A stretch of DNA of 24,969 nt from Octopus sinensis (taxonomy: Eukaryota). The notes below the pieces were generated by a model, which was not told where the DNA came from, made no database searches, and saw only the letters and a list, made by a program, of their open reading frames with translations. The position numbers and the translations under genes were made by a program. Shown one piece after another: positions 1 to 24,876 of this stretch. The first letter of the stretch is position 1. The number at the start of each line of letters is the position of its first letter. The DNA is taken from NCBI RefSeq assembly GCF_006345805.1, contig NW_021836196.1:1-24969 (forward strand), read 5' to 3'.

Positions 1-349
1 TTACTAATTTGTTAACTGGTAAATGTAAAAGAAACCAGCATCGTCCAAGGGAATTGCTAGTTTCTAACATTATTTACACAAATGAATTTTCTATTAGAAT
101 GAATTTGATGAAAGCAAAGACATATATACAAGATTGAACCATTTCTTTAGACTGCCAAAAAATGGGTACTTTGTAAGTAATGATTGGAATGATTGATCAT
201 CAGTTCATTAGTTTAAAAATATCAATGCATTTAAGCAAATGAAATAATGTATTTAAGCTCAGTAATTAAAGACAATATTAATTTCTATTTCAGACTGAAT
301 ATTTGAAGCCATCTCCAACCTGGATACTGTATTAAAATCAAGCCCAGAG

Positions 350-2705
350 ATGTTGTTACACCTGTGTCTTTTATTGACTTTCTTCCACTGTTGTCTAAGT
401 GAAGATATCACATACCATGTTAAAGAAGAGAATGGTCCCTATACCTATATAGGGGACATTGCTACTGACCTACAGAAATCAGACAGCTCCTTCTTAAAGA
501 ATAAGGATTTAATTACATTTAGTCAACTGCAACAAAAGGGAGAACAGTTGTTCAATGTGACGAGAACAGGTAAACTGTACACTGTTGAGACATTGGATGC
601 TGAGTCTGTGTGTAGTTATGAGAAAGAATGTTTTGAAATCGTTAAAGTTGCTGTTCACAAATCCAAGACATTTATGAAGATCTTAAAGATTAAAGTCATA
701 ATAGAAGACATCAATGACCACCAACCTGAGTTTCCTGAGAAGGACATTACTATACATTTCCGAGATGGAGATGGTAAAGGCATGAAAAGGCCCATACCTC
801 ATGCTATCGACAAAGATATGAGTCCAGAAAACAGCTTAATTACTTATGAATTGAAAAAGGATAATGGACGTTTTTCTTTATCAGTTTCTAAACAAACAGA
901 TGAAATATCAACATTACGAATTATTTTAGAAGAGAAATTGGACAGAGAAAAAGAAGACAATTACAATATTGAAGTCATTGCTAAAGATGGAGGAACTCCC
1001 CAAAAAAGTCCATTTTAAATGTGAAAATATCTGTAGAAGATGAAAATGATAATGCACCACAATTTTCTCAAAGTATCTACAATGTCTCTATTGAACATAA
1101 ACATAAAAAGAATATTCCTGTAGTCACATTATCTGCCAGTGATTTAGATATTGGCAGGAATGGTAAAATATCTTTCTATTTTGCTAGGAAAACTACTGAG
1201 AAAGTGAAGAGAAACTTTAATTTAGATGAAAATACTGGAAAATTATATTTAGCTACATCTTCAAAAATTGATAAAGAAGAGTCTTTTAAATTATACATCG
1301 AAGCCAGAGATGATGGCAGTCCTCCTCTGAGTTCCATAGCAACAGTTATGGTAAATGTCATCAACCAGCAGAACAATCCTCCAAATATTGATGTGAACTT
1401 TATTTCTACACGGAATCACAACACAGCTACCATTCTGGAAGACATCAAAGTTGGTAGCTTCATTGCTTATGTGATGGTCACTGACAATGATGTTGGACAC
1501 ACAATGGACAGGTGAACTGTCATATCAAAGACGACACATTCAAACTACAGTCAATGGGATCGAAGGAATATAAAATAGTTCTAAAGAAAGCAGTAGACAG
1601 AGAGACAGGAACATTATCACTTTACTGTGTCGTGTGAAGATAAGGATTACCTGCTCTGAAAACTGATAAAGATCTGTCAATCCAAGTGTTGGATGTGAAT
1701 GATGTAGAACCACACTTTACGAAAGACACATTCAAGTTCCTTACCTATGAGAATGACAAAGCTAATTTCCCTATTGGCTTTATCAATGCTACAGACCCAG
1801 ATATTGGTAAGGGAGGTGAATTGTCTTATTCTCTGAGAAATAAACAGCAATATCGTCTGCCATTCCAGATTATCAACTCTGGCTTTATTTCAACAAACCA
1901 GTCTTTAGACAGAGAACACAGAGATTTCTATGAGTTTGAGGTTTTTGTGAAAGACAATGGAAGCCCATCTCTGAATAACACAGTGAATGTTGAAGTGGAA
2001 GTATTGGATAGAAATGATAATGCTCCATATTTTACATTTCCTAGTGTTGACCCTTTCACTCTTAATGTCCACTATCATCCGCAAAGTAAGAACGACATCA
2101 CAGTTCTGAAAGCATCTGATATAGACAGTCACATGAATGCTTTTCTCAGGTATGAAATCGTTTCAGGTAACGAGAGACAGTTATTTAAACTGGATTCGTT
2201 CACTGGTGTGTTATCTTACTCTCGCACAGTTTACCAAAATGATGCCGGATCATATGAGCTTGAGTTTGTTGTGAAAGACAGTGGTACTCCAGTTCTGTCA
2301 GCAACAACTAGTGTGTCTTTGACACTGACTGTTAGTAACAAGACGTCACCAATGTTCACAGCTGTGCACCTACCAAGTGATAACACAATAGATGCGACAT
2401 TGTTGATTATCATTGTAGTAGCAGCTGTGATAGTATCTATAGCTATTGTGGTTTCTATAACCCTGTGTATTGTGAGATGTAACAATGTGAGAAATAGCTC
2501 ATCTGAAAGAACAGCAGAAGAGAAACAGGCATACCAATGTCGCAATGAGATGAGACAGTTGATCTATCAAGGTAACAACAGTGTACCTGTGATGTCAGGT
2601 AATCGAGGAGAGATGACAGACAGATATGGTCATTCGAGGAGCCATTACTATCCTGAAGACTGGAAGACATCGACAATGAGTCGGACACTTCAGAAGTCTA
2701 CAAAG
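350..2705 (+). CDS. Pcdh: Protocadherin gene 1, large exon (signal peptide, EC1-EC6, TM, proximal tail), interrupted by 4 small indels as sequenced
   Basis: ORFs 350-1018, 1021-1515 and 1686-2765 are consecutive pieces collinear with intact gene 2. Cadherin motifs (IEDINDHQPEF, LDRE, DENDNAPQF, DVNDVEPHF, DRNDNAPYF), EC1 C-X5-C (CSYEKEC), hydrophobic TM (LLIIIVVAAVIVSIAIVVSITLCIV). Acceptor TTTCAG ends 293; phase-0 donor AAG|GTAAGC at 2706. Indels versus gene 2: -1 at C-run 998-1001, +2 at AC 1497-1502, -2 at 1605-1607, -1 at AA 1642-1643. Restored length is 2358 nt, equal to gene 2. Confidence 0.92.
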
Positions 2706-3469: not shown

Positions 3470-3622
3470 TATGTAATTATAGAGTGAAGTTTTGGGCTTA
3501 TAAACCTAATGTTTTATCTTTTCTTAATACAAAACTAGGTTAAATTATTCAATATCAGATATGGCACTGTTAATCCTAAATGATATATTTATAGTATGTG
3601 TTGTTACTATTGTATTTTACAG

Positions 3623-3776
3623 CAGAAATACAGTCAACCGATTGAGGTGACATCTTATGGAGACAACAGACCATCCTCTAACTATCCCACTGACACACTG
3701 ACCAGTCGTAAGAGTAGTGGACAGTGCTGGAGTGAGCGGTCAAGTAGACAGTATGAAGAAATACCAGCAATGTCAG
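3623..3776 (+). CDS. Pcdh: Pcdh gene 1 exon B (cytoplasmic, QKYSQPIEV...RQYEEIPAMS)
   Basis: NAGNAG acceptor (TTTTACAG CAG), phase 0 in and phase 1 out (TCA G|GTAG at 3777). Near-identical copies lie at 14729 and 24726, in the same position relative to each large exon. Confidence 0.9.
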
Positions 3777-4900: not shown

Positions 4901-5488
4901 TCTTTGTTGGTATTGGAAAGAGGCATTCACACCCTACAAGACCTACAATTAAATGGATGGCTTGAGCAAGGCTTAATTAATTGTCTTTAGTCACGTCAGA
5001 ATTCCGTAATGTTGACACATGAATTTTTTATCAGTTTGGTCAGCTTGCTATTAACTCAGTCAGTTCTGCTATTGTTTGTGACATAGTAGAGTTTATTGAC
5101 CCTTCATCAGCTTAGTATCCCTCTATTAATTCAGTTAGGTGTAACAACAGTGGTAAACCAGTAGAGTCTGTTGATAGATGACCAATTAGATCTTCCACCT
5201 AGTAACTCAACTGTGATACTGTTTGGGATAAGCCAGTAAAGCCTTCGGATCTTTCAGCAGCTAAGTCATCTGGTTATTCACCCAGTCAGCTGTAACACTG
5301 TGACAGAATTCAACAATGGTACCCCAGTAATCACTGATATCTTTCCATCTGCTAAGACAGCCCCTGGACAGCTCAGCTAGCAGTGTATATTATTAGTTAG
5401 ATTTATGAATTACAAACTACTGAGGTAAATATTATTAACACTATCCACTTCTCTTGTACCGTAAGTGAAAATTATCCTTATTATTAAT

Positions 5489-5643
5489 CATCATCATCAT
5501 TTAGCGTCCGTTTTCCATGCTAGCATGGGTTGGACGGTTCAACTGGGGTCTGTGAAGCCAGAAGGCTGCATCAGGCCCAGTCTGATCTGGCAGTGTTTCT
5601 ACGGCCGGATGCCCTTCCTAACGCCAACCACTCCGCGAGTGTA
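5489..5643 (-). mobile_element. 5'-truncated retroposon 3' end (RTE-like tail) with (ATG)n terminus
   Basis: Minus strand ends gtccaacccatgctagcatggaaaacggacgctaaatgatgatgatg. The same terminus recurs at 18151-18217 and 23641-23670. A possible TATTAAT TSD lies at 5482-5488 and 5646-5652. Family assignment is from memory, not a search. Confidence 0.7.
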
Positions 5644-5765
5644 TGTATTAATATTGTTAGAATTATCATTCCATGATTTTTTATTGTCATTTTGTGCTAT
5701 CATTGCATAATTGAACACAGCATCATGTGTTTTGACTACATGCAATGTTTTACAAGTTGTATAAT

Positions 5766-5990
5766 TAGGTGGTGAATTGGCAGAGCCATTACAGTGTCAA
5801 ACCAAATGGTTTGTGGTATCAGTTGACTCTCTGCCCTCTGATGTCAAAGCCTGCCAAGGTCACCTTTGTTTTCCATCATTTTAAGGTCATTAAAAAGTAC
5901 TGATTCAAGGCAATGGGTTGGCCGAACTGTAAGAATGTTGGACCATAAGTCCTCTGCTATTTGATCAGGCTCTTTGCTTTCTGAGTTCAG
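5766..5990 (+). mobile_element. Degenerate SINE-like copies
   Basis: Similar to the element at 17454-17668 (ggtgaattggcagag...ggtcacctttg vs ggcagtgagttggcagaa...ggtcacctttgcc), followed by a second head-like segment. Confidence 0.45.
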
Positions 5991-7420: not shown

Positions 7421-7542
7421 GAATCTATGGTGGTGCCCCACCCGATGTATCAAGCACCAGTGAGAGAGACCATTACCAAGACAGATATGTGAAACCTCCA
7501 GAGAGACAGTTACCTTCAACACCAGATGTTGTTGTCAGTTAA
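7421..7542 (+). CDS. Pcdh: Pcdh gene 1 terminal coding exon C ((G)IYGGAPPDVSSTSERDHYQDRYVKPPERQLPSTPDVVVS*)
   Basis: TGTGTTTCAG acceptor ends 7420. Phase 1 matches exon B; TAA at 7540-7542. Homologous to gene 2 exon C (IYG...QDRYVKPPERQLP[S/A]TPDV). Confidence 0.85.
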
Positions 7543-8056
7543 GTGAGGTTGAGAGAGGAACACAACAGAAATAATATCTCACCTTCAACATTCACACAGT
7601 ATTTAAAAACAACAGAAATATATTAGTTACATAATAATATTATCTGCATTGAATTAGTTATATTCTTGTGTGTGTGTATATGTATATGGGATATTTCCTT
7701 AGAAGACTAATTTAGCAGCTTTGGATATGAACAATTTCAATCAAATTCTAACACTTTAATTGCATAGGCAAAAGAAATATTTTAAGAATTTAAAAATAAA
7801 AACTCAGACGAGGAAAATAAAATCTAAAATTTAAACAGTTTGTTAAATTATGATAAATAATTTTCATATAGATATACTTTCTCTGTTTACATATCTTGTT
7901 TAAATTTTCCAAATCTATCCTGAATAAGAGAGTTAGGTCAGACACACACACTAACTGTTATTGTCAATATTGTATTTACATTTTAAATTACACACACATT
8001 AACAACATCAGCCATATTTTGTTAATATAACCTCTCTGTTCTAAGGATTTCTATAT

Positions 8057-8202
8057 CAGTCTCTCTCCACATCAGACATGTTGGTGTTATATAGACTTAT
8101 CATGGCTGACTGTTAGTGGAGCTGATAGTGTATCTTTTTCTTGCCTTTGAGAGGGAAACTGCATCTAGTTGGAATGAGGCTGGAGTAAGCATCACCCATC
8201 TC
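8057..8202 (+). promoter_or_regulatory. Conserved non-coding block, copy 1 (putative promoter/5' leader of gene 2)
   Basis: Alignable by eye to 15943-16088 (same 146 bp span; shared catggctgactgttagtgg and taagcatcacccatctc) within otherwise unalignable spacer. Function is inferred. Confidence 0.5.
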
Positions 8203-8317
8203 CCCCTCTCTCTCTCCCTCTCTCACACACACATATACACTAAACATCACCCATCCTACTCCCTCTCCTTTTCTAAGTGTATATTACACACACGCTTTAT
8301 ACACCACACATTCACAG

Positions 8318-8487
8318 AGGAAGACTTGAGAGGGAACTGCTGGTTCCCACTGACTCACCACCAACACTATTCCATCAACATGAAGCCATTGTCACACCAT
8401 AGCAGCAGTGACACAGACAACCATTAACAACAGAACATTGGGACCAAGTCACAGTTTATACAACAAAGGATTTTACACACAATGAAG
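8318..8487 (+). other. Conserved exon-like element, copy 1 (probable 5' leader exon of gene 2; possibly an alternative last exon of gene 1)
   Basis: 158/159 nt identical to 16143-16301. Preceded by CAG and followed by the donor AAG|GTAAGT at 8488. The next downstream Pcdh acceptor ends at 10858. Confidence 0.7.
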
Positions 8488-10914
8488 GTAAGTTTATTGT
8501 TCAATATTATTTATTCAAATTACGTGAAATAATGATTTCATATGTAGCCTTCCTGTAATATGAAAATGTAATATTCTGATGGTGGCCATATTAGATCTGT
8601 GTCAGTTCATATTGAATGTCTTCTTTTCCATAATGGCTATCATATAATTTACTAACAGGAGAACATTAAAGAAATGGAATATTTATTTTGACTTAACTGT
8701 ATATTTTAAAAATTATTTTGAGTACGTAGCAGTTTCCTGTTTCATATTTTACCCTGTCATTTTCATTATATTCGTAGTAATTATGTTGTATGTAATCATT
8801 GAAGTATATGTGAGGTTTATTCTAATTAGTTTAAATGTAAAATTTCTCATTGAAAGTATGACCATTGAGGTAGAGGCCAAGGAGTTTGTATGTATGTGTG
8901 TATATATATCTCATATTGTATATGTAACAGTTTATATATATATATATATATATAAAGGGGTTTGTATGATTGTGTATAGAGGGATATATATTATTCAAAG
9001 AAATTCCAACTCTGTCTGTTTTTTATGTTTTATTTATATTCTTTATGATATTAATGTAGAATATAGAATATATAGTATAAATAGTATATATAATAAAATG
9101 AAATGAAGTATTGATTGTCTTATCATATATATATATATATATAAACTGTTACATTTACAATATGAGATCTAGAAATGTATGTCCCTGTATGCATATGGAT
9201 ATTTAACAGCAATGCCTTTGAAATATTCATATTTTATTCCCCAAATCATAGGAGCACTAACCATATGGGTGGATCACTTATGAAAAATCTAAACCTACAT
9301 TCTTGAACATTTAGGCTTGAACTAGTTTTCAATATTGATTTGTTAATTTTGAATAATTTAAATGTATTTTATCATATAAAACAATTTCAAAAGATATTTA
9401 CTTCATTTCCACTTTTAATTTAGACATTCTTTCCATTTGTAGATTTTCATATTATTTTAGCCACAGTTCCTTTAATATATTGGTTAGTTTTTATTCCTGC
9501 TAGAAATAAGCAATATATTTTCTCTCTACTCCCTTCAATAGATTTAACTAAACATTTTATTATAGTTGCTCCTTAATTATTGCATTTTATATCTTCCCTA
9601 CATCATATTGTCAAAGCATTCTATAAATGACTGGAGATACATCTCTTATCAGTATCCTTGTAATTGACTTCTTCCATGAAAACAGTTAATCAAAATGTTT
9701 GTGAATTCAACTGATATTTGTATTAAATAGGTAAGATGTTTTATCAGCATCAAGAATAATAATTCAAGTACTGAACATGTTAAAATAGGAGAATTAGATC
9801 TAATTTGATCAATCGTAATTTACGTGTGTGTTACTATTAATGGGGACTGTATTGTCGCTAATATAACTGAATTTCTTTCATATCTCACAGCATCATGCTT
9901 ATTCTTTCTTAATAGTTGGTGGAGACGTTTTTTCCTGAGAATATCTCTACAAAATGGTAACACTATAGATTAGATAAGTCAGCTATTTTGTAATGTAAGT
10001 TGGGATATAAAGCTGTGCCATGTTTCTTTAGATATACTGGCACCAGCGAATTAACTCAAGCTTTACCATGTATGACATGTGTATACATAATTGTGATGAA
10101 AGAGAAGAAAAGTATTTGATACATCCACTGCTCTCTCTCTTTCTCTCTCTCTCTGGTACCTTACAGTCATACCAAAATATTAGACATAGATTAATATCAG
10201 GTTAAGAAAAGCAATGTTTAGATGGTCAGGGATTTTCTGTTAATTGCCAAGAATGAGCACTGAAGCAGTTCCTTGTTATTGTCTGTTATGCTCTGCCTGA
10301 ACAAGCATAGTTATGCAATGTCTCCTTATAATTCTGCTTGCATGTAAACATGGCATGGAGTTGATGAGAAATTATCTAAGATTAATTCACAATTCTTATA
10401 TGCGTCTTATGATACACTTTGCTTTAATCAGAGTCTATACCATAGATATATATGCAGAGTGTGTTATTCTAGTTTGTGTATAATAATCAATGTTCCTAGA
10501 AGAGGCTGCATTCAAAGACAGTTTGGTTGGTATAAAAGGATCAGTTTGTTGGAATTTTAATATTTAACATTACTGTCATTGTTGTTTCTTGTTTGCATCA
10601 TATCCCTATTAAAGAAATTCATTTGCATCATTTGAACAATAAAAAACTACATGTAAAGAGGGATGTGTTTCATATTGTAGCTTTTGTAAATTTACATTGA
10701 TTTCTCATTAATATACAAATAGATTAATAAGTATTTTTTAATTAACATTTTTCATATGGCAACAACCAAAATAGAAAAGAATTTAGAGTAGATGAATAAA
10801 CATTATGACCAGTTATGTTTCTTTTTTCTCAATAATGCAATGAATATTTCTATTTCAGACCGAACATTTGAAGCTGTCTTTCCCTTGGATACTGTATTAA
10901 CAACAAAACCAGAG

Positions 10915-13272
10915 ATGTTGCGATTTCTGTGTGTTTTACTGACTTTCTTCCACTGTTATTTAAGTGAAGATATCACTTACCATGTTGAAGAAGAGAAGAA
11001 TTCCTACACTTATGTAGGGGACATTGCTACTGACTTACAGAAGGCAGACAGCTCCTATTTAAAGAACAAGGATTTAATTACATTTAGTCAACTGCAACAA
11101 AAGGGAGAACAGTTGTTCAATGTGACGAGAACAGGTAAACTGTACACTGTTGAGACATTGGATGCTGAGTCTGTGTGTAGTTATGAGAAAGAATGTTTTG
11201 AAATCGTTAAAGTTGCTGTTCACAAATCCAAGACATTTATGAAGATCTTAAAGATTAAAGTCATAATAGAAGACATCAATGACCACCAACCTGAGTTTCC
11301 AACTGAAGAAGTCAACATTCAGTTTTCAGAGAGAGATAGTAAAGGTTCAAAACTATCAATACCCAATGCTGTGGATAATGATATGGGTTATAAGAACAGC
11401 TTAATTAATTATGAATTGAAAGAGGATAATGAACATTTCTCTTTATTAGTTGCCAAACAAGCTGATGGTATATCATCATTAGAAATTATTTTAGAAGAGA
11501 ATTTAGACAGAGAAACAAAAGACAACTACAATATTGAAGTCATTGCTAAAGATGGAGGAACTCCACCAAAACAATCTGTTTTAAATGTGAAAATATCTGT
11601 AGAAGATGAAAATGATAACAGGCCGCAATTTTCTCAAAGTATCTACAATGTTTCTATTGAACATAAACATAAAAAGAACATTCCAGTAGTCACATTATCT
11701 GCCAGTGATTTGGATATTGGCAAGAACGGTAAAATATCTTATTATTTCAGTAGAAAGACTGCAGAAAAAATGAAGAGATACTTTCATTTAGATAAAAGTA
11801 CTGGAAAAATTTTCTTAGTACAATCTTTAGAGGTTGACACAAAAAATTCTTTAAAATTATACATTGAAGCCAGAGATGGTGGCAACCCTCCTCTCAGTAC
11901 CATAGCAACTGTTATGGTAAATGTTATCAACCAACACAACAATCACCCAAATATTGATGTGAACTTTATTTCTACACAGAATCACAACACAGCTACCATT
12001 CTGGAAGACATCAAAGTTGGTAGTTTCATTGCTTATGTGATGGTCACTGACAACGATGTTGGACACAATGGACAGGTGAACTGTCATATCAAAGATGACA
12101 CATTCAAACTACAGTCAATGGGATCAAAGGAATATAAAATAGTTCTAAAGAAAGCAGTAGACAGAGAGACACAGGAACATTATCACTTTACTGTGTCGTG
12201 TGAAGATAAAGGATTACCTGCTCTGAAAACTGATAAAGATCTGTCAATCCAAGTGTTGGATGTGAATGATGTAGAACCACACTTCACGAAAGACACATTC
12301 AAGTTCCTTACCTATGAGAATGACAAAGCTAATTTCCCTATTGGCTTTATCAATGCTACAGACCCAGATATTGGTAAGGGAGGTGAATTGTCCTATTCTC
12401 TGAGAAATAAACAGAAATATCGTCTGCCATTCCAGATTATCAACTCTGGCTTTATTTCAACAAACCAGTCTTTAGACAGAGAACACAGAGATTTCTATGA
12501 GTTTGAGGTTTTTGTGAAAGACAATGGAAGCCCATCTCTGAATAACACAGTGAATGTTGAAGTGGAAGTATTGGATAGAAATGATAATGCTCCATATTTT
12601 ACATTTCCTAGTGTTGACCCTTTCACTCTTAATGTCCACTATCATCCGCAAAGTAAGAACGACATCACAGTTCTGAAAGCATCTGATATAGACAGTCACA
12701 TGAATGCTTTTCTCAGGTATGAAATCGTTTCAGGTAACGAGAGACAGTTATTTAAACTGGATTCGTTCACTGGTGTGTTATCTTACTCTCGCACAGTTTA
12801 CCAAAATGATGCCGGATCATATGAGCTTGAGTTTGTTGTAAAAGACAGTGGTACTCCAGTTCTGTCAGCAACAACTAGTGTGTCTTTGACACTGACTGTT
12901 AGTAACAAGACGTCACCAATGTTCACAGCTGTGCACCTACCAAGTGATAACACAATAGATGCAACATTGTTGATTATCATTGTAGTAGCAGCTGTGATAG
13001 TATCTATAGCTATTGTGGTTTCTATAACCCTGTGTATTGTGAGATGTAACAATGTGAGAAATAGCTCATCTGAAAGAACAGCAGAAGAGAAACAGGCATA
13101 CCAATGTCGCAATGAGATGAGACAGTTGATCTATCAAGGTAACAACAGTGTACCTGTGATGTCAGGTAATCGAGGAGAGATGTCAGAGAGATATGGTCAT
13201 TCAAGGAGCCATTACTATACTGAAGACTGGAAGACGTCAACAATGAGTCGGACACTTCAGAAGTCTATCAGG
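10915..13272 (+). CDS. Pcdh: Protocadherin gene 2, large exon (intact, 786 codons; full protein about 875 aa with exons B and C)
   Basis: Open frame with signal peptide MLRFLCVLLTFFHCYLS, six EC repeats, EC1 C-X5-C and TM. Acceptor TATTTCAG ends 10858, homologous to gene 1's at 293, so the true ATG is 10915 rather than 10792. Donor AGG|GTAAGC at 13273. Confidence 0.95.
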
Positions 13273-13669: not shown

Positions 13670-14728
13670 TTAAAGCAGTAATTTTATTTTATGCAGCTAT
13701 GTGTGGTGTCAGGTGGGATGGTATTGAAGGGGTTAATTTTATAATCTGTCACTAAATAGTATTCTATGTCTTTTTCCGTTTGCTCCTCTTATTTCAGTTT
13801 GTCATCGTCATTATTATTCATTGCTGTATTGTTTATCATTCTCATCATTACCTTTTCTTTGATTCTGCTTTAGTGTTGATGAGGAGTTTTGACATCTTTC
13901 ATGATGTCTTCATCTTAGATTATTTCAATGTGGAAAATTCATGCTCCTTATTTTAGTAAATTATTTATGCCTGGTACCATATCGAATTATATCAGTTTAG
14001 CATTACTGTCATCAGTCTGTATCCAAGTGATACCCTACTCTATTTGTAAACTTTAAATTCCATACACTCCAAAGTACTCCTTGTACCCTTAGCACTTCTG
14101 TTCTTTTATTAATTTTGGTCACCAATCTAGAGGATATTACTATTTATTTATATTTGATATTGAAGATTGCTATTACACTTTATCACCTTTTTTTTGTGTG
14201 TGTTTCATATTTTTTACATGGAAAATTGTCTGCTTATTCTGCAAACCTTGTGCTATGACATATGAGAATATTATTTAGAATAGTCTTCATTGCTAACTAA
14301 TGCTTTAGTCATCTCTCATTCACTAAGTGTTTCTAAAACTAGAACTAGGACCTGAGTTTAACAAACCTCTGTGGTTTTCAAAGATTTTCATTCTTTTTTT
14401 GATCATCCAAAAAGGTGAGTAGCATCAGAAATGGTAAAGCATTGGATTAATTGTTTGACAGTATTTGTATCTAGTTGTATGCTGAGTCAAAATGCTGCTG
14501 GAGTTTGCCTTTCATACCAGTTATGTATGGAGGGCAGTTCTATTGACTGTATTCTTTCCATAAAAAGGACCTTGTGTCTGCATAAGAAATTATTTTACAA
14601 TTATTTTGCCAAACGGATTGATATTGGTAAAAAAGTAGGCAGTTGTTTTATACCAAAGATGGATGCATACAACTCCAGAGAAAGTATCAATTATATTATC
14701 TATATCTTGTTACTATTGTATTTTCCAG

Positions 14729-14882
14729 CAGAAATACAGTCAACCGATTGAGGTGACATCTTATGGAGACAACAGACCATCCTCTAACTATCCCACTGAC
14801 ACACTGACCAGTCGTAAGAGCAGTGGACAGTGCTGGAGTGAGCGGTCAAGTAGACAGTATGAAGAAATACCAGCAATGTCAG
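14729..14882 (+). CDS. Pcdh: Pcdh gene 2 exon B
   Basis: NAGNAG acceptor TTTTCCAG CAG; one synonymous difference from gene 1 exon B; donor G|GTAAGG at 14883. Confidence 0.92.
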
Positions 14883-14968: not shown

Positions 14969-15084
14969 CTATCTATGGTATGCAACAGGACCCCACAGCC
15001 AACACTGAGAAACTGCCCCAGGACAGATATGTGAAACCTCCAGAAAGACAACTCCCTGCTACACCTGATGTTATAAACAACTGA
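14969..15084 (+). CDS. Pcdh: Pcdh gene 2 terminal coding exon C ((A)IYGMQQDPTANTEKLPQDRYVKPPERQLPATPDVINN*)
   Basis: 86-bp intron 14883-14968 ending TGTTCCAG; phase 1; TGA at 15082-15084; homologous to 7421-7542. Confidence 0.88.
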
Positions 15085-15539: not shown

Positions 15540-15942
15540 CGGATATATTAAAATAGCAATAAGGAAGTTTGGCAATTGATAAGTAGTGTCTTGAATGTTT
15601 ATGTTTAAATAGACAATCAAAATATATGATGAAAAATTAATTATGTAAGGCATTTAAGAAACAAGAAATGACTTTCTTAAGAAGACTATTGTCTTACAGC
15701 ATTTAGACATTTTTTTAAACATTCCTTCTGTGTTTATAAGGACAACTGATGGTTTTTTAGAAATTAGGTCATAAAATATAAATTATTTCAAAATATCCTC
15801 ATTTATAAACATATTTATCAGTATTTTCCATTATGAATTTTGTGTTACATCATAAGTTAGTAAATGTATTTACTAACAACAATAATGTTTTGTTAATATA
15901 AGATCTATATGAAACACTGAATGTATATATATATACACACGC

Positions 15943-16088
15943 CAGTCTTTTTCTACATCAGGCATATTGGTGTTGTATAGACTTAACATGGCTGACTGTT
16001 AGTGGGGCTGATATTCTGTATTCTTTCTTTCTTCTTCTGTGTGAGGGGAAATAGTCTGAGTGAAACTGGAATAAGCATCACCCATCTC
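15943..16088 (+). promoter_or_regulatory. Conserved non-coding block, copy 2 (putative promoter/5' leader of gene 3)
   Basis: Paralogous to 8057-8202 and in the same position relative to the exon-like element. Confidence 0.5.
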
Positions 16089-16142
16089 ACACACACACAC
16101 ATTCGTATACTTACACACTCACTAAACATCACACAGCTACAG

Positions 16143-16310
16143 AGGAAGACTTGAGAGGGAACTGCTGGTTCCCACTGACTCACCACCAACACTATTCCAT
16201 CAACATGAAGCCATTGTCACACCATAGCAGCAGTGACACAAACAACCATTAACAACAGAACATTGGGACCAAGTCACAGTTTATACAACAAAGGATTTTA
16301 CTCAATAAAT
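16143..16310 (+). other. Conserved exon-like element, copy 2 (probable 5' leader exon of gene 3)
   Basis: Near-identical to 8318-8476. CAG before and GTAAGT at 16311 after. The next Pcdh acceptor ends at 19127 (alternative 19155). Confidence 0.7.
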
Positions 16311-17453
16311 GTAAGTCTGTCATTAATATTATATTCCTGTATAATTTACATTATGAAATTTATATATTTTCTTTATTACAAAACTAACAAATTTCTAATT
16401 TAGATTCTCATAAAGGAAAAATCTTTTAATTATATTTAGAATTTCCTTTGTCTTTTCCATTTTTTATTCCAAATGTTACTGTGTTTCTCTATAGTTCTTC
16501 ATGATGATTCATTTCAACTTGCCACAAAATCCTTATTACTTATCCTAATATATCCATAGTTTTATCTCTTTACAAATGGCCTTTTCTTTTTAGCTTTTCT
16601 TTCTCAGTCCTCAGTTTGTAATATACTTTTATTAACTGAGATCCAAATATTTCAGTTATTTTCAATACATACATTTGTTTTGTTGTATCCTCATGAGACA
16701 CTTATTTGTTAAAGAGTTTAGCCTTGGTACGGAAGGAAACAGTACGTAAAGGAAATGGATTGCTGCTTTGTCATTTACTTTCCTAAACTGTTGTCTTCTA
16801 TGAAGATTTAAATTTCTTAAATATAACAATTTCTTAGATTTTATCCATGTTTCAATCAGTAATAATTATTGACTAAAATAATTTAACCTAGATTTGAATA
16901 AATGTTTTAGTTTTTTTTAATTTATGCTAACAATTTTAATTTTGCTGGTTAGTGTTTTACTTATATTTGACTGAATCAACACCTGTATGTTTCTAGTGTT
17001 GTCTCTTCATACCTGTAATTAGGTAGAGTCAACTGTGGTGAAATTTGATTTGAAATTAAAGAATTTAGTTTGCTATTCTCCTGTTTTGGTTATTTCTTTT
17101 AAAATTGAAACTATTAATTAGCAGATATGTCAGTGACGAGTAATGTTGTTCCATTACTAAGATTTTTATTTATTTTTGTGTATATTTGCTTTTATTTTAC
17201 TCAATAATGGAGGTCAAATGTCTGAAGTTACATAATTAGGGGTATCCATCAATAGGTGATTATTTCTATTGTCTTTATTGAAGAAAAAATATGGGATTTG
17301 TTAGGTTGTTCTAATGTTGTTAGAGATACAAGTAAATTGAAATTATTACCATCAGACTCCATTGTGACCATACCATACTCCATTTTGTTCATCACAACTA
17401 TTTCTATGATGAACTAAGATTATTTTATTCCAAAAATTTAATATTACTATCAA

Positions 17454-17668
17454 GGCAGTGAGTTGGCAGAATTGTTAGCACACTCGGCAAAATGATTAGC
17501 AGCATTTTGTCTGCCTTCACATTCTGGGTTCAAATTCTGTTGAGGTCACCTTTGCCTTTCCTCTTTTCAGGATTGATAATATAAGTTGATTACATCCACC
17601 CCAGTAGATGTAATCAACTTACCCTGTACCTTAGAATTGCTGGCCTTGTGCCAAAATTTGAAATCAAT
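17454..17668 (+). mobile_element. SINE-like element
   Basis: Head with B-box-like gggttcaaattc, central ggtcacctttgcctttc segment, tail ending ccaaaatttgaaatc; related to 5766-5900. Confidence 0.6.
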
Positions 17669-17734
17669 ATCTCTTTCTATTTTAAAATCTAAAAATGAAG
17701 TGTTGTCAGAGATTAATAATAATTCTGTGTTTTA

Positions 17735-18068
17735 ATGTCAACCACTTTACAGTGTGCTGGATGCTTTTAATGTGGCAACAACATGAGTGCTTTTTACATG
17801 TGACTGTCACAGGACTCTTGTAGGCCAGTCCTCTTCATCAGGGGTGGTGGCCTTAACACTTCTGCTGTGGAGGGTGGGTCTTCCTGAGTACAGCAAGGCA
17901 CCAGATGTCTTGGTCTTTTGTCATCTCCAATGAAAGGTTCCGTGTTCTGAGGTTGTCCTTTGGTACTTCGTCCCATATCTTCCTGAGTCTCCCTCTTCCA
18001 TGAGTTCCATCTATTTCGACTGATTAGTCCTTCTTTATCAGGCTGTCAATATCCATCTGCATCACATG
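17735..18068 (-). mobile_element. RTE-type LINE 3' end remnant
   Basis: Minus-strand translation IDGTHGRGRLRKIWDEVPKDNLRTRNLSLEMTKDQDIWCLAVLRKT resembles the RTE ORF C-terminal GRGRPRKTW...D...W motif. Confidence 0.7.
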
Positions 18069-18150
18069 GAAATATATGCTATTTAATTAATGATCAGCTA
18101 TCAGAATCACAAACGCGCAAATTACAGTGTTAGCTTCATTCATTACTGTT

Positions 18151-18217
18151 GTCCAACCCATGCTAGCATGGAAAACGGATGTTAAACAATGATGATGATG
18201 ATGATGATGATGATGAT
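18151..18217 (+). mobile_element. Retroposon 3' terminus with (GAT)n tail
   Basis: gtccaacccatgctagcatggaaaacggatgttaaacaatgatgatg..., the reverse complement of the terminus at 5489-5540. Confidence 0.7.
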
Positions 18218-18322
18218 AACTAGCAAATATTTGTGTGATTGAAATGGCTTTTTCTGCATATCAAAAGTATAGAAAAAATATGCTTACACACTTTTGTTTT
18301 ACAACTAGGCTTCTTAATTTAT

Positions 18323-18720
18323 GTCATCATCATCCCCATCATTTAATGTCCATTTTACCACTCTTACATTGGTCAGCTGGAATTTGTTGTGGCAGAATTT
18401 CTATAACTAGATGCTCTATTTGTTATCAACCATCACCTGTTTCTCGGCAAAGTAACATTTCCCATTGACCGGACATGCTTCATGAAATGAGCAACTCTGG
18501 CTATATAATGGTCACCCTTGTTTAGAACCACCTTGTGATATCTAGACATGAGTATACATAAAACACACTCATATATAAGACAGGCTTCTTTCAGTTCCCA
18601 TGTGCTAAAGCCACTCAGAAGGCTTTAGTCAGCCTGGAACTGTAGTAGCAGACACTTATCTAAGGTACCATGCCATGAAACTGAACCCAAAACCACAAAT
18701 TTGAGAAGCAGCTAAACCTG
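18323..18720 (-). mobile_element. Degenerate SINE-like element
   Basis: Begins with a (CAT)n-like stub similar to the other tails and ends in a decayed tRNA-like head (gaaactgaacccaaaacc on the plus strand). Boundaries are approximate. Confidence 0.45.
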
Positions 18721-19173
18721 ATAGACATAGCATTTAATTCTTCCTCAAATCACATCGTTCATTGCCAAGTGCCTCTGCAAGTAGAATAACAGAATAAGTA
18801 ATTATGAACAGTTTATATTACATACTTTGCTTTTGTCATGTACATGAACAATGTTGTGTAAGGAAATCTTATTTTATTTCACTTTTTATGAATGGAACTG
18901 TGACTTGTAGAGTGAACTGAACACTCTGTTTATTAATGATTACTGTTGGTTGTAGGTGTTTCTTTAGTGAACAACATATGATTTTTATTGAATATTTTTT
19001 GAAATTCTATTGTTTTGTGTGGTTAATCTTATGATGTGGGTGTTTAATGTTTCTTAACTTTTTCATGAGGATTTGTAATAAAATTGTGAATATATATTCT
19101 TAATTAGATTTTATATTTTCATTTCAGGTGTGGTTTACATTTTTGTTTTCTATAGAAGTCCTTCTTCATCCAA

Positions 19174-21543
19174 ATGGCAGATATGTTTGTAGCAATTTGC
19201 ATACTTCTCTCTTGTATGCATTGTAGTCTGTGTAAAGACATTACCTTTCATGTAAAGGAGGAGAATGTTCCTTACTATTTCATAGGTGACATTGCTACTG
19301 AAACTCTTGTCACCAAAACTCTTTTAACTGACGATGCCAGTCTCTTCACATTTAATCAACTTAAACAGAAAGGAACTCAACTGTTTAATGTAACAAAAGA
19401 AGGAAAATTGTACACAGCTCAAACTTTGGATGCCGAAGTTTTGTGTCGATATAACACTGAATGTTACAGAACTGTGAAAGTTGCTATCCATAAACATAAA
19501 ACATTTATGAAGATCTTAAAGATTAAAGTCATAATAGAAGACACCAATGACCACCAACCTGAGTTTCCTCAGAAAGAAATCACTCTACATTTTAGGGAAG
19601 CAGATGGTAAAGGTATGAAGAAGGCTATACCTAATGCTGTTGATAAAGATGTTGGATATCAGAACAGGCTGATTAATTATAAATTGAGAAATAATTCTGT
19701 GAAATTTGTGCTGTCTGTTTCTAAAAGAGTGGATGGAATATCCAGATTGGAAATTGTTTTGAATGAAAAATTAGACAGAGAGCAAAAAGATATCTATCAT
19801 GTTCAGGTATCAGCTACAGATGGGGGATCCCCACCTAAAGAATGTGTCTTAAAGATAACAATAATAGTAGAAGATGAGAATGATAATTTACCTCTTTTCT
19901 CAAATGACCTCTACAATATTTCTATTCAGAATACTTATCAAATATACAAACCGATATTAACTCCTTCTGCAAATGATAAGGATAGTGGTAAAAATGGGAT
20001 GATTTCTTATTATTTTAGTCCAATGACTTCTGATATTGACAAAACATACTTTGGCCTGAATAAAACAACTGGAGATATATTTCTAATTGATGAAATTGAT
20101 ATTGATGAAGAGAGGATTATGTATACACTTTATATAGAAGCCAGGGATGGAGGTTTTCCACCCCTGAGTTCCATAGCAGCTGTCCATGTAAATGTTATCA
20201 ACGAACACAACAAACCCCCAAATATTGATGTGAACTTTATTTCTACACAGAATCACAACACAGCCACCATTCTGGAAGACATCAAAGTTGGTAGTTTCAT
20301 TGCTTATGTGATGGTCACGGACAATGATGTTGGACACAATGGAGAGGTGAACTGTCATATCAAAGACGACACATTCAAACTACAGTCAATGGGATTGAAG
20401 GAATATAAAATAGTTCTAAAGAAAGCAGTAGACAGAGAGACACAGGAACATTATCACTTTACTGTGTCGTGTGAAGATAAAGGATTACCTGCTCTGAAAA
20501 CTGATAAAGATCTGTCAATCCAAGTGTTGGATGTGAATGATGTAGAACCACACTTTACGAAAGACACATTCAAGTTCCTTACCTATGAGAATGACAAAGC
20601 TAATTTCCCTATTGGCTTTATCAATGCTACAGACCCAGATATTGGTAAGGGAGGTGAATTGTCTTATTCTCTGAGAAATAAACAGCAATATCGTCTGCCA
20701 TTCCAGATTATCAACTCTGGCTTTATTTCAACAAACCAGTCTTTAGACAGAGAACACAGAGATTTCTATGAGTTTGAGGTTTTTGTGAAAGACAATGGAA
20801 GCCCATCTCTGAATAACACAGTGAATGTTGAAGTGGAAGTATTGGATAGAAATGATAATGCTCCATATTTTACATTTCCTAGTGTTGACCATTTCACTCT
20901 TAATGTCCACTATCATCCGCAAAGTAAGAACGACATCACAGTTCTGAAAGCATCTGATATAGACAGTCACATGAATGCTTTTCTCAGGTATGAAATCGTT
21001 TCAGGTAACGAGAGACAGTTATTTAAACTGGATTCGTTCACTGGTGTGTTATCTTACTCTCGCACAGTTTACCAAAATGATGCCGGATCATATGAGCTTG
21101 AGTTTGTTGTGAAAGACAGTGGTACTCCAGTTCTGTCAGCAACAACTAGTGTGTCTTTGACACTGACTGTTAGTAACAAGACGTCACCAATGTTCACAGC
21201 TGTGCACCTACCAAGTGATAACACCATAGATGCGACATTGTTGATTATCATTGTAGTAGCAGCTGTGATAGTATCTATAGCTATTGTGGTTTCTATAACC
21301 CTGTGTATTGTGAGATGTAACAATGTGAGAAATAGCTCATCTGAAAGAACAGCAGAAGAGAAACAGGCATACCAATGTCGCAATGAGATGAGACAGTTGA
21401 TCTATCAAGGTAACAACAGTGTACCTGTGATGTCAGGCAATCGAGGAGAGATGTCAGACAGATACGGTCATTCGAGGAGCCATTATTATCCTGAAGACTG
21501 GAAGACATCAACAATGAGTCGGACACTTCAGAAGTCTACAAAG
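19174..21543 (+). CDS. Pcdh: Protocadherin gene 3, large exon (intact, 790 codons)
   Basis: Signal peptide, EC1 with CRYNTEC, six EC repeats and TM. Acceptor ATTTCAG ends 19127; phase-0 donor AAG|GTAAAT at 21544. Confidence 0.95.
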
Positions 21544-22860: not shown

Positions 22861-22940
22861 TTTACTTTGCATTGTTTTGGCCTTACCCATGATCTTTTAT
22901 ACAATATATTCTACACAATGCTTCACAGTAATTATTCCGT

Positions 22941-22946
22941 TATATA

Positions 22947-22977
<31 letters not shown>

Positions 22978-23164
22978 ATGTATGTATGTATGTATATGTA
23001 TGTATGTATATATATGTATATATATGTTTGTATATATATGTTTGTATATATATGTATATATGTATGTGTATATATGTATGTATATATATGTATATATATA
23101 TATATATACATATATATGAATGTATATATATGTATGTATATATATATATATGTATATATGTATG

Positions 23165-23195
<31 letters not shown>

Positions 23196-23377
23196 GTATA
23201 TGTATATATATATGTATATGTATATGTATATGTATATATATGTATATGTATATATATATGTATATGTATATATATATATATGTATATGTATATATATATG
23301 TATATGTATATATATTGTATATGTATATATATATGTATATATATATATATATATTGTATATGTATATATTATATATG

Positions 23378-23414
<37 letters not shown>

Positions 23415-23568
23415 GTATATTTATATATATGTATATATATATGTATATTTATATATATGTATATATATATGTATATATATATATATGTGTATATATATAT
23501 ATATATATGCATATTTATATATGTGTATATATATATATGCATATTTATATATATGTATATATATATGT

Positions 23569-23625
<57 letters not shown>

Positions 23626-23714
23626 TATATATATATATATCATCATCATCGTTTAACGTCCGCTTTCCATTGTATATATATATGTGTATATGTATATATA
23701 TATATATGTGTGTG

Positions 23715-23746
<32 letters not shown>

Positions 23747-23770
23747 CATACTTGTATACACACATACTGT

Positions 23771-23809
<39 letters not shown>

Positions 23810-23820
23810 GTACATACACA
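22941..23820. repeat. Large compound (TA)n/(TATATG)n microsatellite
   Basis: About 880 bp of TA/TG repeats, which generates the spurious YI-rich ORFs; interrupted by a retroposon stub at 23641-23670. Confidence 0.95.
23641..23670 (-). mobile_element. Retroposon 3'-terminal stub inside the microsatellite
   Basis: catcatcatcgtttaacgtccgctttccat matches the terminus at 5489-5520. Confidence 0.65.
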
Positions 23821-24725: not shown

Positions 24726-24876
24726 AAATACAGTCAACCCATTGAGGTGACATCTTATGGAGACAACAGACCGTCTTCTAACTATCCCACCGACACATTG
24801 ACCAGTCGTAAGAGCAGTGGACAGTGCTGGAGTGAGCGGTCAAGTAGACAGTATGAAGAAATACCAGCAATGTCAG
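24726..24876 (+). CDS. Pcdh: Pcdh gene 3 exon B (gene continues beyond the window)
   Basis: Single acceptor CATCAG ends 24725. Same peptide as the other exon B copies minus the first Gln. Donor G|GTAAGA at 24877. Confidence 0.9.

What the first reader, a model, noticed from the sequence alone, without database searches (positions are those of the whole stretch)
8057..8493. Repeated inter-gene cassette: conserved block plus a 99%-identical leader-like exon before each Pcdh
Seen: 8057-8202 is similar to 15943-16088. A variable CA/CT tract follows, then 159 bp with one mismatch (8318-8476 vs 16143-16301), then GTAAGT donors (8488, 16311). Each large exon begins at a splice acceptor upstream of its ATG (293, 10858, 19127), so an upstream exon is required, and these donors lie 2.4 and 2.8 kb before those acceptors. 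Inference: a standardized promoter/first-exon module per gene. It is far more conserved than the EC1-3 coding sequence of the genes it would drive (genes 2 and 3), making it a candidate functional analogue of the repeated promoters underlying vertebrate Pcdh promoter choice. It predicts another copy a few kb upstream of this window.
Basis: partly seen in the sequence, partly recalled or inferred. Interest (0 to 1): 0.8.

Follow-up and report, generated by a model that had tools for sequence, protein, structure and literature searches.

The report
Octopus protocadherin promoter and leader exon
Each gene in this tandem array of octopus protocadherin (neuronal adhesion) genes is preceded by a near-identical non-coding module that is most likely its own promoter plus a spliced 5' leader exon, which is an ordinary gene architecture but gives a defined sequence for studying how octopus neurons switch these genes on.

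Summary
The window is Octopus sinensis contig VCDQ01002625.1, with three tandem protocadherin (Pcdh) genes. The two cassette copies share a 159-nt core with one mismatch, each ending in GTAAGT.

Across 27 copies from O. sinensis, O. bimaculoides and an assembly labelled Argonauta hians:
- The GTAAGT is kept in 27/27.
- Among 21 Octopus copies, core identity averages 95.5% and falls to 69% within 100 nt past the donor.
- The core has stop codons in all frames and indels that are not multiples of three.
- It is the only conserved element between one gene's last exon and the next gene's large exon.
- All 25 large exons start at a canonical acceptor 40-60 nt before the ATG, with a cassette donor 0.8-4.4 kb upstream in all 20 testable cases.
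- At an array edge, the first gene has a diverged copy with GTAAGT upstream and no Pcdh gene before it.

Best reading: a per-gene promoter plus non-coding leader exon, homogenised like the 3' half of the coding exon.

Not shown: I found no transcript, TSS or junction evidence. The cassette is subfamily-specific and has no CTCF motif or conserved CGCT box. The analogy to vertebrate promoter choice is untested. NCBI models suggest some read-through splicing that skips the cassette.

The parts
7929..8056 (+). Promoter-proximal conserved region, copy 1. Contains AGTTAGGTCA (TTAGGTCA 7933-7940) and the TATA-like TTGTTAATATAA (8019-8030).
   Evidence: Conserved in 9-13 of 14 other units at 89-97%. 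Both motifs recur in nearly all copies in Octopus and in the 'A. hians' assembly. Assigning them promoter roles is inference from consensus only.
8057..8202 (+). Block A, copy 1. Begins at an initiator-like TCAGTC (8056-8061, A at 8058), 32 nt downstream of the TATA-like box. Candidate transcription start and first part of the leader.
   Evidence: 79% (gapped) to 15943-16088. CATCAGACATGTTGGTGTTATATAGACTTATCATGGCTGACTGTTAGTGGAGCTGATAG is conserved across 20+ copies.
8203..8317 (+). Variable CT/CA microsatellite tract between blocks A and B, copy 1.
   Evidence: Length and sequence vary among all copies.
8318..8487 (+). Core non-coding leader exon, copy 1 (5' edge uncertain, about 8300-8320). 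Contains the upstream open reading frame (uORF) ATG 8380 (MKPLSHHSSSDTDNH*) and the small hairpin GGGAACTGCTGGTTCCC.
   Evidence: One mismatch in 159 nt to copy 2. 96-100% identity to 14 other units. Stops in all three frames. Non-3n indels among copies.
8488..8493 (+). GTAAGT splice donor, copy 1.
   Evidence: Invariant in 27/27 copies. Identity falls from 95.5% to 68.6% immediately after it.
8494..10858 (+). Rest of the inferred intron (8488-10858, 2371 nt) between leader 1 and the gene 2 large exon. Ends in tttctatttcag.
   Evidence: No similarity to any other unit. Canonical acceptor at 10858.
10859..13272 (+). Gene 2 large exon: 56 nt of 5' UTR, ATG at 10915, six cadherin repeats, transmembrane segment and part of the cytoplasmic tail. 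Exon 2 is 14729-14882 and exon 3 is 14969-15084.
   Evidence: Intact 875-aa product, 90% identical to O. sinensis Pcdh. It forms the 3' part of NCBI model XP_029657777.2.
15764..15942 (+). Promoter-proximal region, copy 2: TTAGGTCA 15764-15771, TTGTTAATATAA 15890-15901, and a (TA)n run 15924-15936.
   Evidence: Same variant type as the L007 units.
15943..16088 (+). Block A, copy 2 (initiator-like CCAGTC 15942-15947).
16089..16142 (+). Variable CA tract, copy 2.
16143..16310 (+). Core non-coding leader exon, copy 2.
16311..16316 (+). GTAAGT splice donor, copy 2.
16317..19127 (+). Rest of the inferred intron (16311-19127, 2817 nt) to the gene 3 large exon.
   Evidence: Not conserved apart from SINE-like fragments. 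Acceptor at 19127, with an alternative at 19154.
19128..21543 (+). Gene 3 large exon (ATG 19174). Exon 2 is 24723-24876.
   Evidence: Matches NCBI XP_029657779.2.
294..2705 (+). Gene 1 large exon (acceptor 293, ATG 350), frameshifted. Exon 2 is 3623-3776 and exon 3 is 7421-7542. Its leader is predicted to lie upstream of the window.
7543..7548 (+). GTGAGG donor directly after the gene 1 stop codon (TAA 7540-7542). This is the rival partner of the 10858 acceptor implied by the NCBI read-through model.
   Evidence: Present only in units whose exon 3 ends in ...VVVS.

Best explanation
The cassette is the 5' regulatory and leader module of the Pcdh gene downstream of it.

A promoter-proximal region (AATTAGGTCA element, TATA-like TTGTTAATATAA, initiator-like TCAGTC) is inferred to start transcription at or after block A. 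The roughly 170-nt core is a non-coding 5' UTR exon. Its invariant GTAAGT donor is inferred to be cis-spliced, across a fast-evolving 0.8-4.4 kb intron, to the acceptor 40-60 nt upstream of the ATG of the large coding exon.

The module was copied with each tandem duplication. It is kept nearly identical among paralogues by the same concerted evolution (gene conversion) plus purifying selection that homogenises the 3' half of the large exon and exons 2-3. EC1-3 is left free to diverge.

The leader carries a conserved upstream ATG/uORF and a small hairpin, so it may also set translation efficiency.

Shown: the anatomy, the conservation pattern, the conservation of the splice sites, and linkage to the downstream gene at one array edge.

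Inferred: the transcription start site, the actual splice junction, and any regulatory role.
For: 1. Exon-like boundary. GTAAGT is invariant in 27/27 copies from three assemblies. Mean pairwise identity is 95.5% in the core, 68.6% in the next 100 nt and 53% beyond that.
2. Non-coding. There are stops in all frames, 1- and 2-nt indels among copies, and no Rfam match. The fold z-score of +0.56 indicates no structured RNA.
3. Need for an upstream exon. 25/25 large exons begin at a pyrimidine tract plus CAG upstream of the ATG, and similarity among paralogues starts exactly there. A Logan transcript of a distant Pcdh paralogue (L003) has at least 148 nt of non-intronic leader upstream of the equivalent point. 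NCBI model P0004 uses the same acceptor with an upstream exon.
4. Only candidate. The cassette is the only conserved element between exon 3 and the next acceptor. A cassette donor lies 0.8-4.4 kb upstream in all 20 testable units.
5. The alternative donor is not general. The post-stop TAA|GTGAG donor is missing after gene 2 and in all L007 units, yet their downstream genes keep the acceptor.
6. Array edge. The first gene of locus L009 has a diverged B-like exon ending in GTAAGT 4.25 kb upstream (nhmmer E=8e-5). No Pcdh 3' exons occur in the 5.5 kb before it.
7. Canonical AATAAA signals lie between the upstream stop codon and the cassette.
8. Orientation follows the gene, shown by the inverted copy in L002.
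Against: - I obtained no direct transcript, TSS or junction evidence. Logan-derived proteins of this subfamily were not found.
- NCBI model XP_029657777.2 (P0135) joins gene 1 exon 3 directly to the 10859 acceptor and skips the cassette. Other NCBI models splice across units. The acceptor may therefore also, or instead, serve read-through transcripts.
- The TATA and initiator assignments rest on consensus matching only, and block A contains ATGs.
- In the 'A. hians' assembly the core is only 77-85% identical to Octopus. The near-identity within Octopus therefore owes much to recent duplication or conversion rather than deep constraint.
- The array-edge copy is weakly scored (17 bits).
Confidence: 0.68

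Rival explanations
1. The core is a real exon, but of read-through or chained transcripts, or of an intergenic non-coding RNA, rather than the first exon of the downstream gene. Transcription would continue from the upstream gene. The cassette would be an optional internal exon (candidate branch point CTAAAC, acceptor AAAG|G). Large exons would be reached by splicing from upstream units.
For: NCBI model P0135 joins the gene 1 post-stop donor (7542|7543) to acceptor 10858|10859. P0002 uses exon 2 of the next unit. The P0023 coding range spans four units. CTAAAC and an AG two nt into the core are conserved in the Octopus copies.
Against: The AG is not conserved in the 'A. hians' copies. The post-stop donor is absent in many units. 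The array-edge copy has no upstream Pcdh gene. The chimeric NCBI models need base deletions or non-canonical junctions and may be annotation artefacts among near-identical paralogues.
Confidence: 0.14
2. The cassette is a non-transcribed or non-spliced regulatory element (enhancer, insulator or boundary) repeated once per unit, and the GTAAGT is part of a binding site rather than a donor.
For: Several conserved motifs lie upstream of the core. The core also holds a palindrome, GGGAAC..GTTCCC.
Against: The sharpest conservation boundary falls exactly at a perfect donor consensus in 27/27 copies, while the 9-11 nt just before it vary. This reading also leaves every large-exon acceptor without a partner. 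No CTCF motif was found.
Confidence: 0.08
3. The cassette is the distal 3' UTR or a downstream element of the upstream gene. It sits a fixed ~435 bp after the stop codon in the L005 units (O. sinensis).
For: The spacing to the upstream stop is tight and regular. Copy 2 has AATAAA at 16304, just before the GTAAGT.
Against: AATAAA signals occur earlier, at 7795, 7816 and 15491. The AATAAA at 16304 is unique to copy 2. The 3' UTR between the stop and the cassette is not conserved between unit types, whereas the cassette is. The array-edge copy lacks an upstream gene.
Confidence: 0.06
4. The cassette is a dispersed repeat or transposable-element fragment that happens to lie in the repeat unit.
For: Octopus genomes are repeat-rich, and SINE-like fragments do occur in these intergenic regions.
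Against: All 27 copies sit at the same place and in the same orientation within Pcdh units. No copy lies elsewhere in about 230 kb examined, and none in the other-subfamily locus L008. There are no terminal repeats and no coding capacity.
Confidence: 0.02

Closest known systems
Vertebrate clustered protocadherin variable-exon promoters with the conserved sequence element (CSE, a CTCF site; reviewed in PMC7811963)
   Same: Both are tandem head-to-tail arrays of large Pcdh exons. Each exon is preceded at a roughly regular distance by a sequence module conserved among paralogues. In both, EC1-3 diverges while the membrane-proximal and cytoplasmic parts are homogenised.
   Different: In vertebrates the conserved element lies just upstream of the start codon of each variable exon, with no separate leader exon, and the variable exons splice to shared constant exons. 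The CSE has a CGCT box and binds CTCF. Here the module is a separate non-coding exon 0.8-4.4 kb upstream, and each unit has its own exons 2-3. No CTCF motif or conserved CGCT box is present. Stochastic choice is untested.
Vertebrate olfactory receptor genes (non-coding 5' leader exon or exons spliced to a single large coding exon; from my own knowledge)
   Same: Large tandem families in which each member has its own promoter and a non-coding first exon, separated by a kb-scale intron from the exon holding all or most of the coding sequence.
   Different: Olfactory receptor leader exons are not near-identical between paralogues. The Pcdh genes here also have two further small 3' coding exons.
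Chelicerate sDscam arrays with tandem 5' cassettes and alternative promoters (cited in PMC6339937)
   Same: An invertebrate adhesion-receptor array in which each tandem 5' unit is thought to have its own promoter.
   Different: Those cassettes splice to shared downstream exons. Here whole genes are duplicated (PMC9068888).
Spliced-leader RNA genes (trans-splicing)
   Same: A near-identical short non-coding exon ending in a donor site, present in many copies.
   Different: This exon is about 170 nt rather than 16-50 nt. It occurs exactly once per gene, in cis, in the same orientation and a few kb upstream. I saw no Sm-site-like sequence after the donor. This reading was rejected.

Membership tests
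Cis-spliced non-coding 5' leader exon with its own promoter | Conserved 5' splice donor at the 3' edge of the element | tested here: met
   GTAAGT is present in 27/27 copies, and identity drops from 95.5% to 68.6% right after it.
Cis-spliced non-coding 5' leader exon with its own promoter | Downstream coding exon begins at a splice acceptor upstream of its ATG, on the same strand, within intron range | tested here: met
   25/25 large exons have such an acceptor. The donor-to-acceptor distance is 0.8-4.4 kb in 20/20 testable units.
Cis-spliced non-coding 5' leader exon with its own promoter | No coding capacity | tested here: met
   Stops in all three frames. Non-3n indels among copies.
Cis-spliced non-coding 5' leader exon with its own promoter | Belongs to the downstream gene rather than the upstream one | tested here: met
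   The array-edge gene in L009 has a diverged copy upstream with no Pcdh gene before it. This is a single case, and the copy scores weakly (E=8e-5).
Cis-spliced non-coding 5' leader exon with its own promoter | Transcript evidence for the start site and the leader-to-coding-exon junction | not testable with these tools
   Two protein searches found no Logan-derived protein of this subfamily, so no transcript contig could be fetched. The tools do not show UTR exons of the NCBI models.
Cis-spliced non-coding 5' leader exon with its own promoter | Core-promoter motifs at the appropriate spacing | tested here: inconclusive
   A TATA-like TATAA lies 32 nt upstream of the initiator-like TCAGTC and is conserved in most copies. 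This rests on consensus reading only.
Vertebrate-type clustered Pcdh promoter (CSE/CTCF, promoter choice) | CSE with a CGCT box / CTCF-binding motif in the repeated element | tested here: not met
   The CTCF consensus with up to 2 mismatches gave one hit in the window, at 5831, outside the cassette and at chance level. CGCT occurs in copy 1 only.
Vertebrate-type clustered Pcdh promoter (CSE/CTCF, promoter choice) | Variable exons splice to shared constant exons | tested here: not met
   Each unit carries its own exons 2 and 3, in agreement with PMC9068888. Some NCBI models nevertheless splice across units.
Vertebrate-type clustered Pcdh promoter (CSE/CTCF, promoter choice) | Stochastic, monoallelic choice of one promoter per neuron | not testable with these tools
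   This needs single-cell or allele-specific expression data.
Dispersed repeat / transposable element | Copies scattered and unlinked to the host gene family | tested here: not met
   All 27 copies lie in the same position within a unit. None is found elsewhere in about 230 kb, and none in L008. The whole genome could not be searched.
Structured non-coding RNA / miRNA precursor | Rfam match or significantly stable fold | tested here: not met
   No Rfam hit. MFE -24.8 kcal/mol, z = +0.56.

The most novel reading that the evidence does not exclude
The standardised promoter-plus-leader module is the substrate of a vertebrate-like selection mechanism. In each octopus neuron, one or a few of the roughly 30 near-identical promoters in this array would be chosen. 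The near-identity would be maintained because all copies must respond to the same choice machinery. The cross-unit splicing seen in NCBI models would reflect real read-through from a chosen promoter. This would be a convergent, CTCF-independent solution to generating neuronal Pcdh diversity.
Probability: 0.1. Interest if true: 0.8.

Novelty: new member of a known kind. Interest (0 to 1): 0.38.

Why it matters
How octopus neurons regulate their roughly 170 protocadherin genes is unknown. Published genome papers state only that the genes are whole-gene tandem duplicates homogenised by gene conversion (PMC9068888, PMC6339937).

This work pins down a defined, conserved, about 560-bp candidate promoter and leader for one large array, at least 340 kb on O. 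sinensis CM016872.1. That makes promoter usage directly testable by CAGE, ATAC-seq, single-cell 5' reads or reporter assays.

It also shows that the leader shares the homogenised state of the constant-like coding parts, while EC1-3 escapes it. That parallels the pattern seen in vertebrate clusters.

In itself, a non-coding first exon duplicated together with its gene is ordinary.

Tried and rejected
1. Transcript evidence. Logan contigs of distant paralogues gave one spliced leader with no similarity to the cassette (L003, SRR25158139) and one unspliced or genomic contig (L004). Protein searches with the N-terminal and C-terminal parts found no Logan-derived sequences of this subfamily.

2. 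An intron between blocks A and B. The candidate donor is GA|GTAAGC at 8187-8194, the CT/CA tract would serve as the polypyrimidine tract, and CTAAAC as the branch point. The GT is not kept: 15 copies have GT, 4 have GC and 1 has AT. The AG at 8316-8317 is AA in most copies, and the nearby AG is lost in the 'A. hians' copies. This remains unresolved and is not adopted.

3. The NCBI chimeric models as evidence.
- P0001 has a non-canonical junction.
- The P0135 junction works only if two bases are removed to eliminate the stop codon (my inference).
- I treated both as annotation models, not as transcript data.

4. Structured RNA or miRNA precursor: no Rfam hit, and the fold is not better than shuffled sequence.

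5. CTCF/CSE motif: absent.

6. An analogous cassette in another Pcdh subfamily (L008). The only shared intergenic block there is a SINE-like dispersed repeat. The nhmmer hits are CAG/CAA low-complexity sequence without a donor.

7. Spliced-leader trans-splicing: rejected on exon length, copy arrangement and the lack of an Sm-like site.

8. The Helitron/PIF1-like exon used by P0004 in L005 has no counterpart in the window.

9. Albertin et al. 2015 (PMC4795812) is not held in the library.
Full report
**What the window is**

The window is the 24,969-bp unplaced contig VCDQ01002625.1 of the Octopus sinensis assembly GCA_006345805.1. It carries three head-to-tail protocadherin genes. I modelled them by hand from paralogue alignments and translation.
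- Gene 1: acceptor 293, ATG 350, large exon to 2705, exon 2 at 3623-3776, exon 3 at 7421-7542. Two 1-nt deletions relative to gene 2 break the frame.
- Gene 2: acceptor 10858, ATG 10915, large exon to 13272, exon 2 at 14729-14882, exon 3 at 14969-15084. The product is an intact 875 aa.
- Gene 3: acceptor 19127, ATG 19174, large exon to 21543, exon 2 at 24723-24876.

The best protein matches are O. sinensis, O. bimaculoides, O. vulgaris and 'Argonauta hians' protocadherins.

NCBI annotates the contig with two proteins.
- XP_029657777.2 is a chimera of the gene 1 3' part and gene 2.
- XP_029657779.2 is gene 3.

**Checking the observation**

- 8318-8476 and 16143-16301 are 159 nt with a single mismatch at 8416. 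GTAAGT follows at 8488 and 16311.
- BLAST extends the core similarity to 8279-8510 vs 16105-16332 (91%). It confirms block A, 8057-8202 vs 15943-16088, at 79%.
- A variable CT/CA tract lies between the blocks.

**Is it more than a local duplication?**

I fetched six further loci:
- four regions of O. sinensis chromosome CM016872.1 between 59.50 and 59.84 Mb (L009, L001, L005, L007);
- one region of O. bimaculoides (L002);
- one from an assembly labelled Argonauta hians (L006).

Every repeat unit of this Pcdh subfamily contains the cassette once, in the gene's orientation, between exon 3 of one gene and the large exon of the next. That gives 27 copies in all.

A coverage track of the window's two intergenic regions against 14 other units shows that the cassette is the only conserved element there. 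The 2.4-2.8 kb between the GTAAGT and the next acceptor has no detectable similarity to any other unit.

**Exon-like anatomy**

- The GTAAGT is invariant in all 27 copies.
- Among 21 Octopus copies, mean pairwise identity is 95.5% in the 168 nt before the donor. It is 68.6% in the 100 nt after it, 53% in the next 100 nt, and 78% in the 100 nt upstream of the core.
- The 9-11 nt just before the donor vary, including a 2-nt length change. The core also carries 1- and 2-nt indels among copies.
- All three frames have stop codons.

The element is therefore non-coding but ends at a selected splice donor. It is not a known or obviously structured RNA: there is no Rfam hit, and the fold z-score is +0.56.

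In the more distant 'A. hians' copies the core is only 77-85% identical to Octopus. These copies still keep the donor, the ATGAAG, the ACTGACTC motif and AACAAAGGATTTTA.

**Which gene does it serve?**

All 25 large exons examined start at a pyrimidine tract plus CAG, 40-60 nt before the ATG. Similarity among paralogues begins exactly at that acceptor, so an upstream exon is required. A cassette donor lies 0.8-4.4 kb upstream in all 20 units where the upstream sequence is available.

A rival partner exists. In units whose exon 3 ends ...VVVS*, the stop codon is followed directly by GTGAG. The NCBI chimera XP_029657777.2 is explained by joining that donor (7542|7543) to 10858|10859 with two bases removed to eliminate the stop codon (this is my inference).

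That donor is absent after gene 2, in all L007 units and in one 'A. hians' unit. The genes downstream of those units still have the acceptor. It cannot be the general partner.

The strongest discriminating case is an array edge in L009.
- The first gene has its acceptor at 9959 and its ATG at 10001.
- No Pcdh coding sequence lies in the 10 kb upstream.
- A diverged B-like element sits at 5566-5706, ending ...AATGAAA|GTAAGT. A profile search scores it at E=8e-5.
- It is preceded by a (TA)n run rather than block A.

A cassette without an upstream gene but with a downstream one argues that the cassette belongs to the downstream gene. Canonical AATAAA signals between the upstream stop and the cassette (7795, 7816; 15491) are consistent with this, although weak evidence in a 67% A+T sequence.

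**Promoter features (inference from consensus)**

Upstream of the core, nearly all copies keep the following:
- an AATTAGGTCA-like element (7933-7940; 15764-15771);
- TTTTGTTAATATAA (8019-8030; 15890-15901);
- about 27 nt further on, an initiator-like TCAGTC or CCAGTC (A at 8058 and 15944);
- then the well-conserved CATCAGACATGTTGGTGTTATATAGACTTATCATGGCTGACTGTTAGTGGAGCTGATAG.

Similarity between the window's two copies starts at the initiator-like motif.

I considered a short intron between blocks A and B. Its candidate GT and AG are not consistently conserved. The 5' limit of the exon and the start site therefore remain open.

**Why so conserved?**

Within the window, the 3' half of the large exon (from about 11,900 in gene 2 coordinates) is 97-100% identical among the three genes. 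EC1-3 is 48-96% identical. Exon 2 is about 96% identical.

The leader core at 99% therefore shares the homogenised state of the constant-like coding parts. This matches the published suggestion of homogenisation through gene conversion in cephalopod Pcdh arrays (PMC9068888). Near-identity alone does not demonstrate special regulatory constraint. The constraint shows in the sharp boundary at the donor and in the motifs retained in 'A. hians'.

**Comparison with known systems**

Vertebrate clustered Pcdh promoters carry a CSE with a CGCT box that binds CTCF. They sit directly upstream of variable exons that splice to shared constant exons (PMC7811963).

Here the module is a separate non-coding exon kilobases upstream, and each gene has its own 3' exons. 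No CTCF consensus is present. CGCT occurs in one copy only.

The cassette is also subfamily-specific. A locus of another Pcdh subfamily on the same chromosome (L008) lacks it.

The architecture most resembles ordinary genes with a non-coding first exon, such as olfactory receptor genes. I found no paper describing this element.

**Verdict**

- The reading as a per-gene promoter and first-exon module is the best-supported explanation, at about 0.68. It rests on comparative anatomy, not on transcripts.
- The analogy to vertebrate promoter choice is untested, and the one mechanistic marker I could test (CTCF/CSE) is absent.
- This is a new member of a known kind, of moderate interest. Its main value is as a defined handle for experiments on octopus Pcdh regulation.

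Noticed in passing
window 350-2705 (near 1000-1020 and near 1642): The gene 1 large exon has two 1-nt deletions relative to gene 2, giving in-frame stops. It is either a pseudogene or holds assembly errors. NCBI bridges it by starting XP_029657777.2 at an internal Met and fusing it to gene 2.
   Followed up: partly
window 7540-7548; L001, L002, L005, L009 equivalents: In units whose exon 3 ends ...VVVS, the stop codon is followed directly by a good donor (TAA|GTGAG). NCBI chimeric models appear to splice this donor to the next gene's large-exon acceptor. This may reflect real read-through transcripts or an annotation artefact.
   Followed up: partly
L001 10001-24688; L009 10001-39688: NCBI O. 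sinensis models splice a large exon to exons 2-3 of a later unit. XP_036365158/9 use the ...SSNYPTD exon 2, found only in the next unit. The XP model for P0023 spans four units. This is a vertebrate-like 'variable exon to downstream exons' pattern, contrary to the published statement that cephalopods do not do this. It may be an artefact of multi-mapping reads.
   Followed up: partly
window 11900-13100, 20170-21400, 1330-2560: There is a sharp switch inside the large exon. EC1-3 is 48-96% identical among the three paralogues. From about the EC3/EC4 boundary onward the sequence is 97-100% identical. This looks like a gene-conversion tract boundary.
   Followed up: partly
window 8333-8349 and 16158-16174: The small palindrome or hairpin GGGAACTGCTGGTTCCC lies near the 5' end of the leader core. 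A hairpin is still predicted in the diverged 'A. hians' copies, with changed stem bases (for example AGGAAC..GTTCCT).
   Followed up: partly
window 8380-8427 and 16205-16252: The upstream ORF ATGAAGCCATTG...TAA (15 codons) is identical in nearly all Octopus copies. The ATGAAG is also invariant in 'A. hians', but the downstream frame is not. A second ATG at the exon end (CAATGAAG|GT) would open a 15-codon uORF across the splice junction in most units.
   Followed up: partly
window 3620-3625, 14726-14731: A tandem CAGCAG (NAGNAG) acceptor at exon 2 explains the NCBI isoform pairs that differ by one glutamine (876 vs 877 aa).
   Followed up: no
L005 10001-10348 and 18457-18828: A Helitron/PIF1-helicase-like fragment lies between the cassette and the large exon. 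NCBI model XP_029657... (P0004, 1012 aa) uses it as an N-terminal coding exon, spliced to the normal large-exon acceptor. It has no counterpart in the window.
   Followed up: partly
L006 6907-7480 and 8086-8498: In the 'A. hians' assembly, one intergenic region carries two complete tandem cassettes (A plus B, each ending in GTAAGT). These are possible alternative leaders.
   Followed up: no
window 22933-23816: A microsatellite of about 900 bp, (TA)n/(TG)n, lies in the gene 3 first coding intron and produces spurious ORFs on both strands.
   Followed up: no
window 5487-5535 / 18151-18199 (inverted); 5837-5881 / 17523-17567; L008 6939-7087 / 22984-23131: SINE-like dispersed repeat fragments occur in introns and intergenic regions. 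They are unrelated to the cassette.
   Followed up: no
L006 (GCA_054771915.1): Proteins from the assembly labelled Argonauta hians carry O. sinensis LOC numbers (LOC115219398). Their coding sequence is about 91% identical to O. sinensis at the nucleotide level. The annotation seems to have been transferred, and I did not verify the species label.
   Followed up: no
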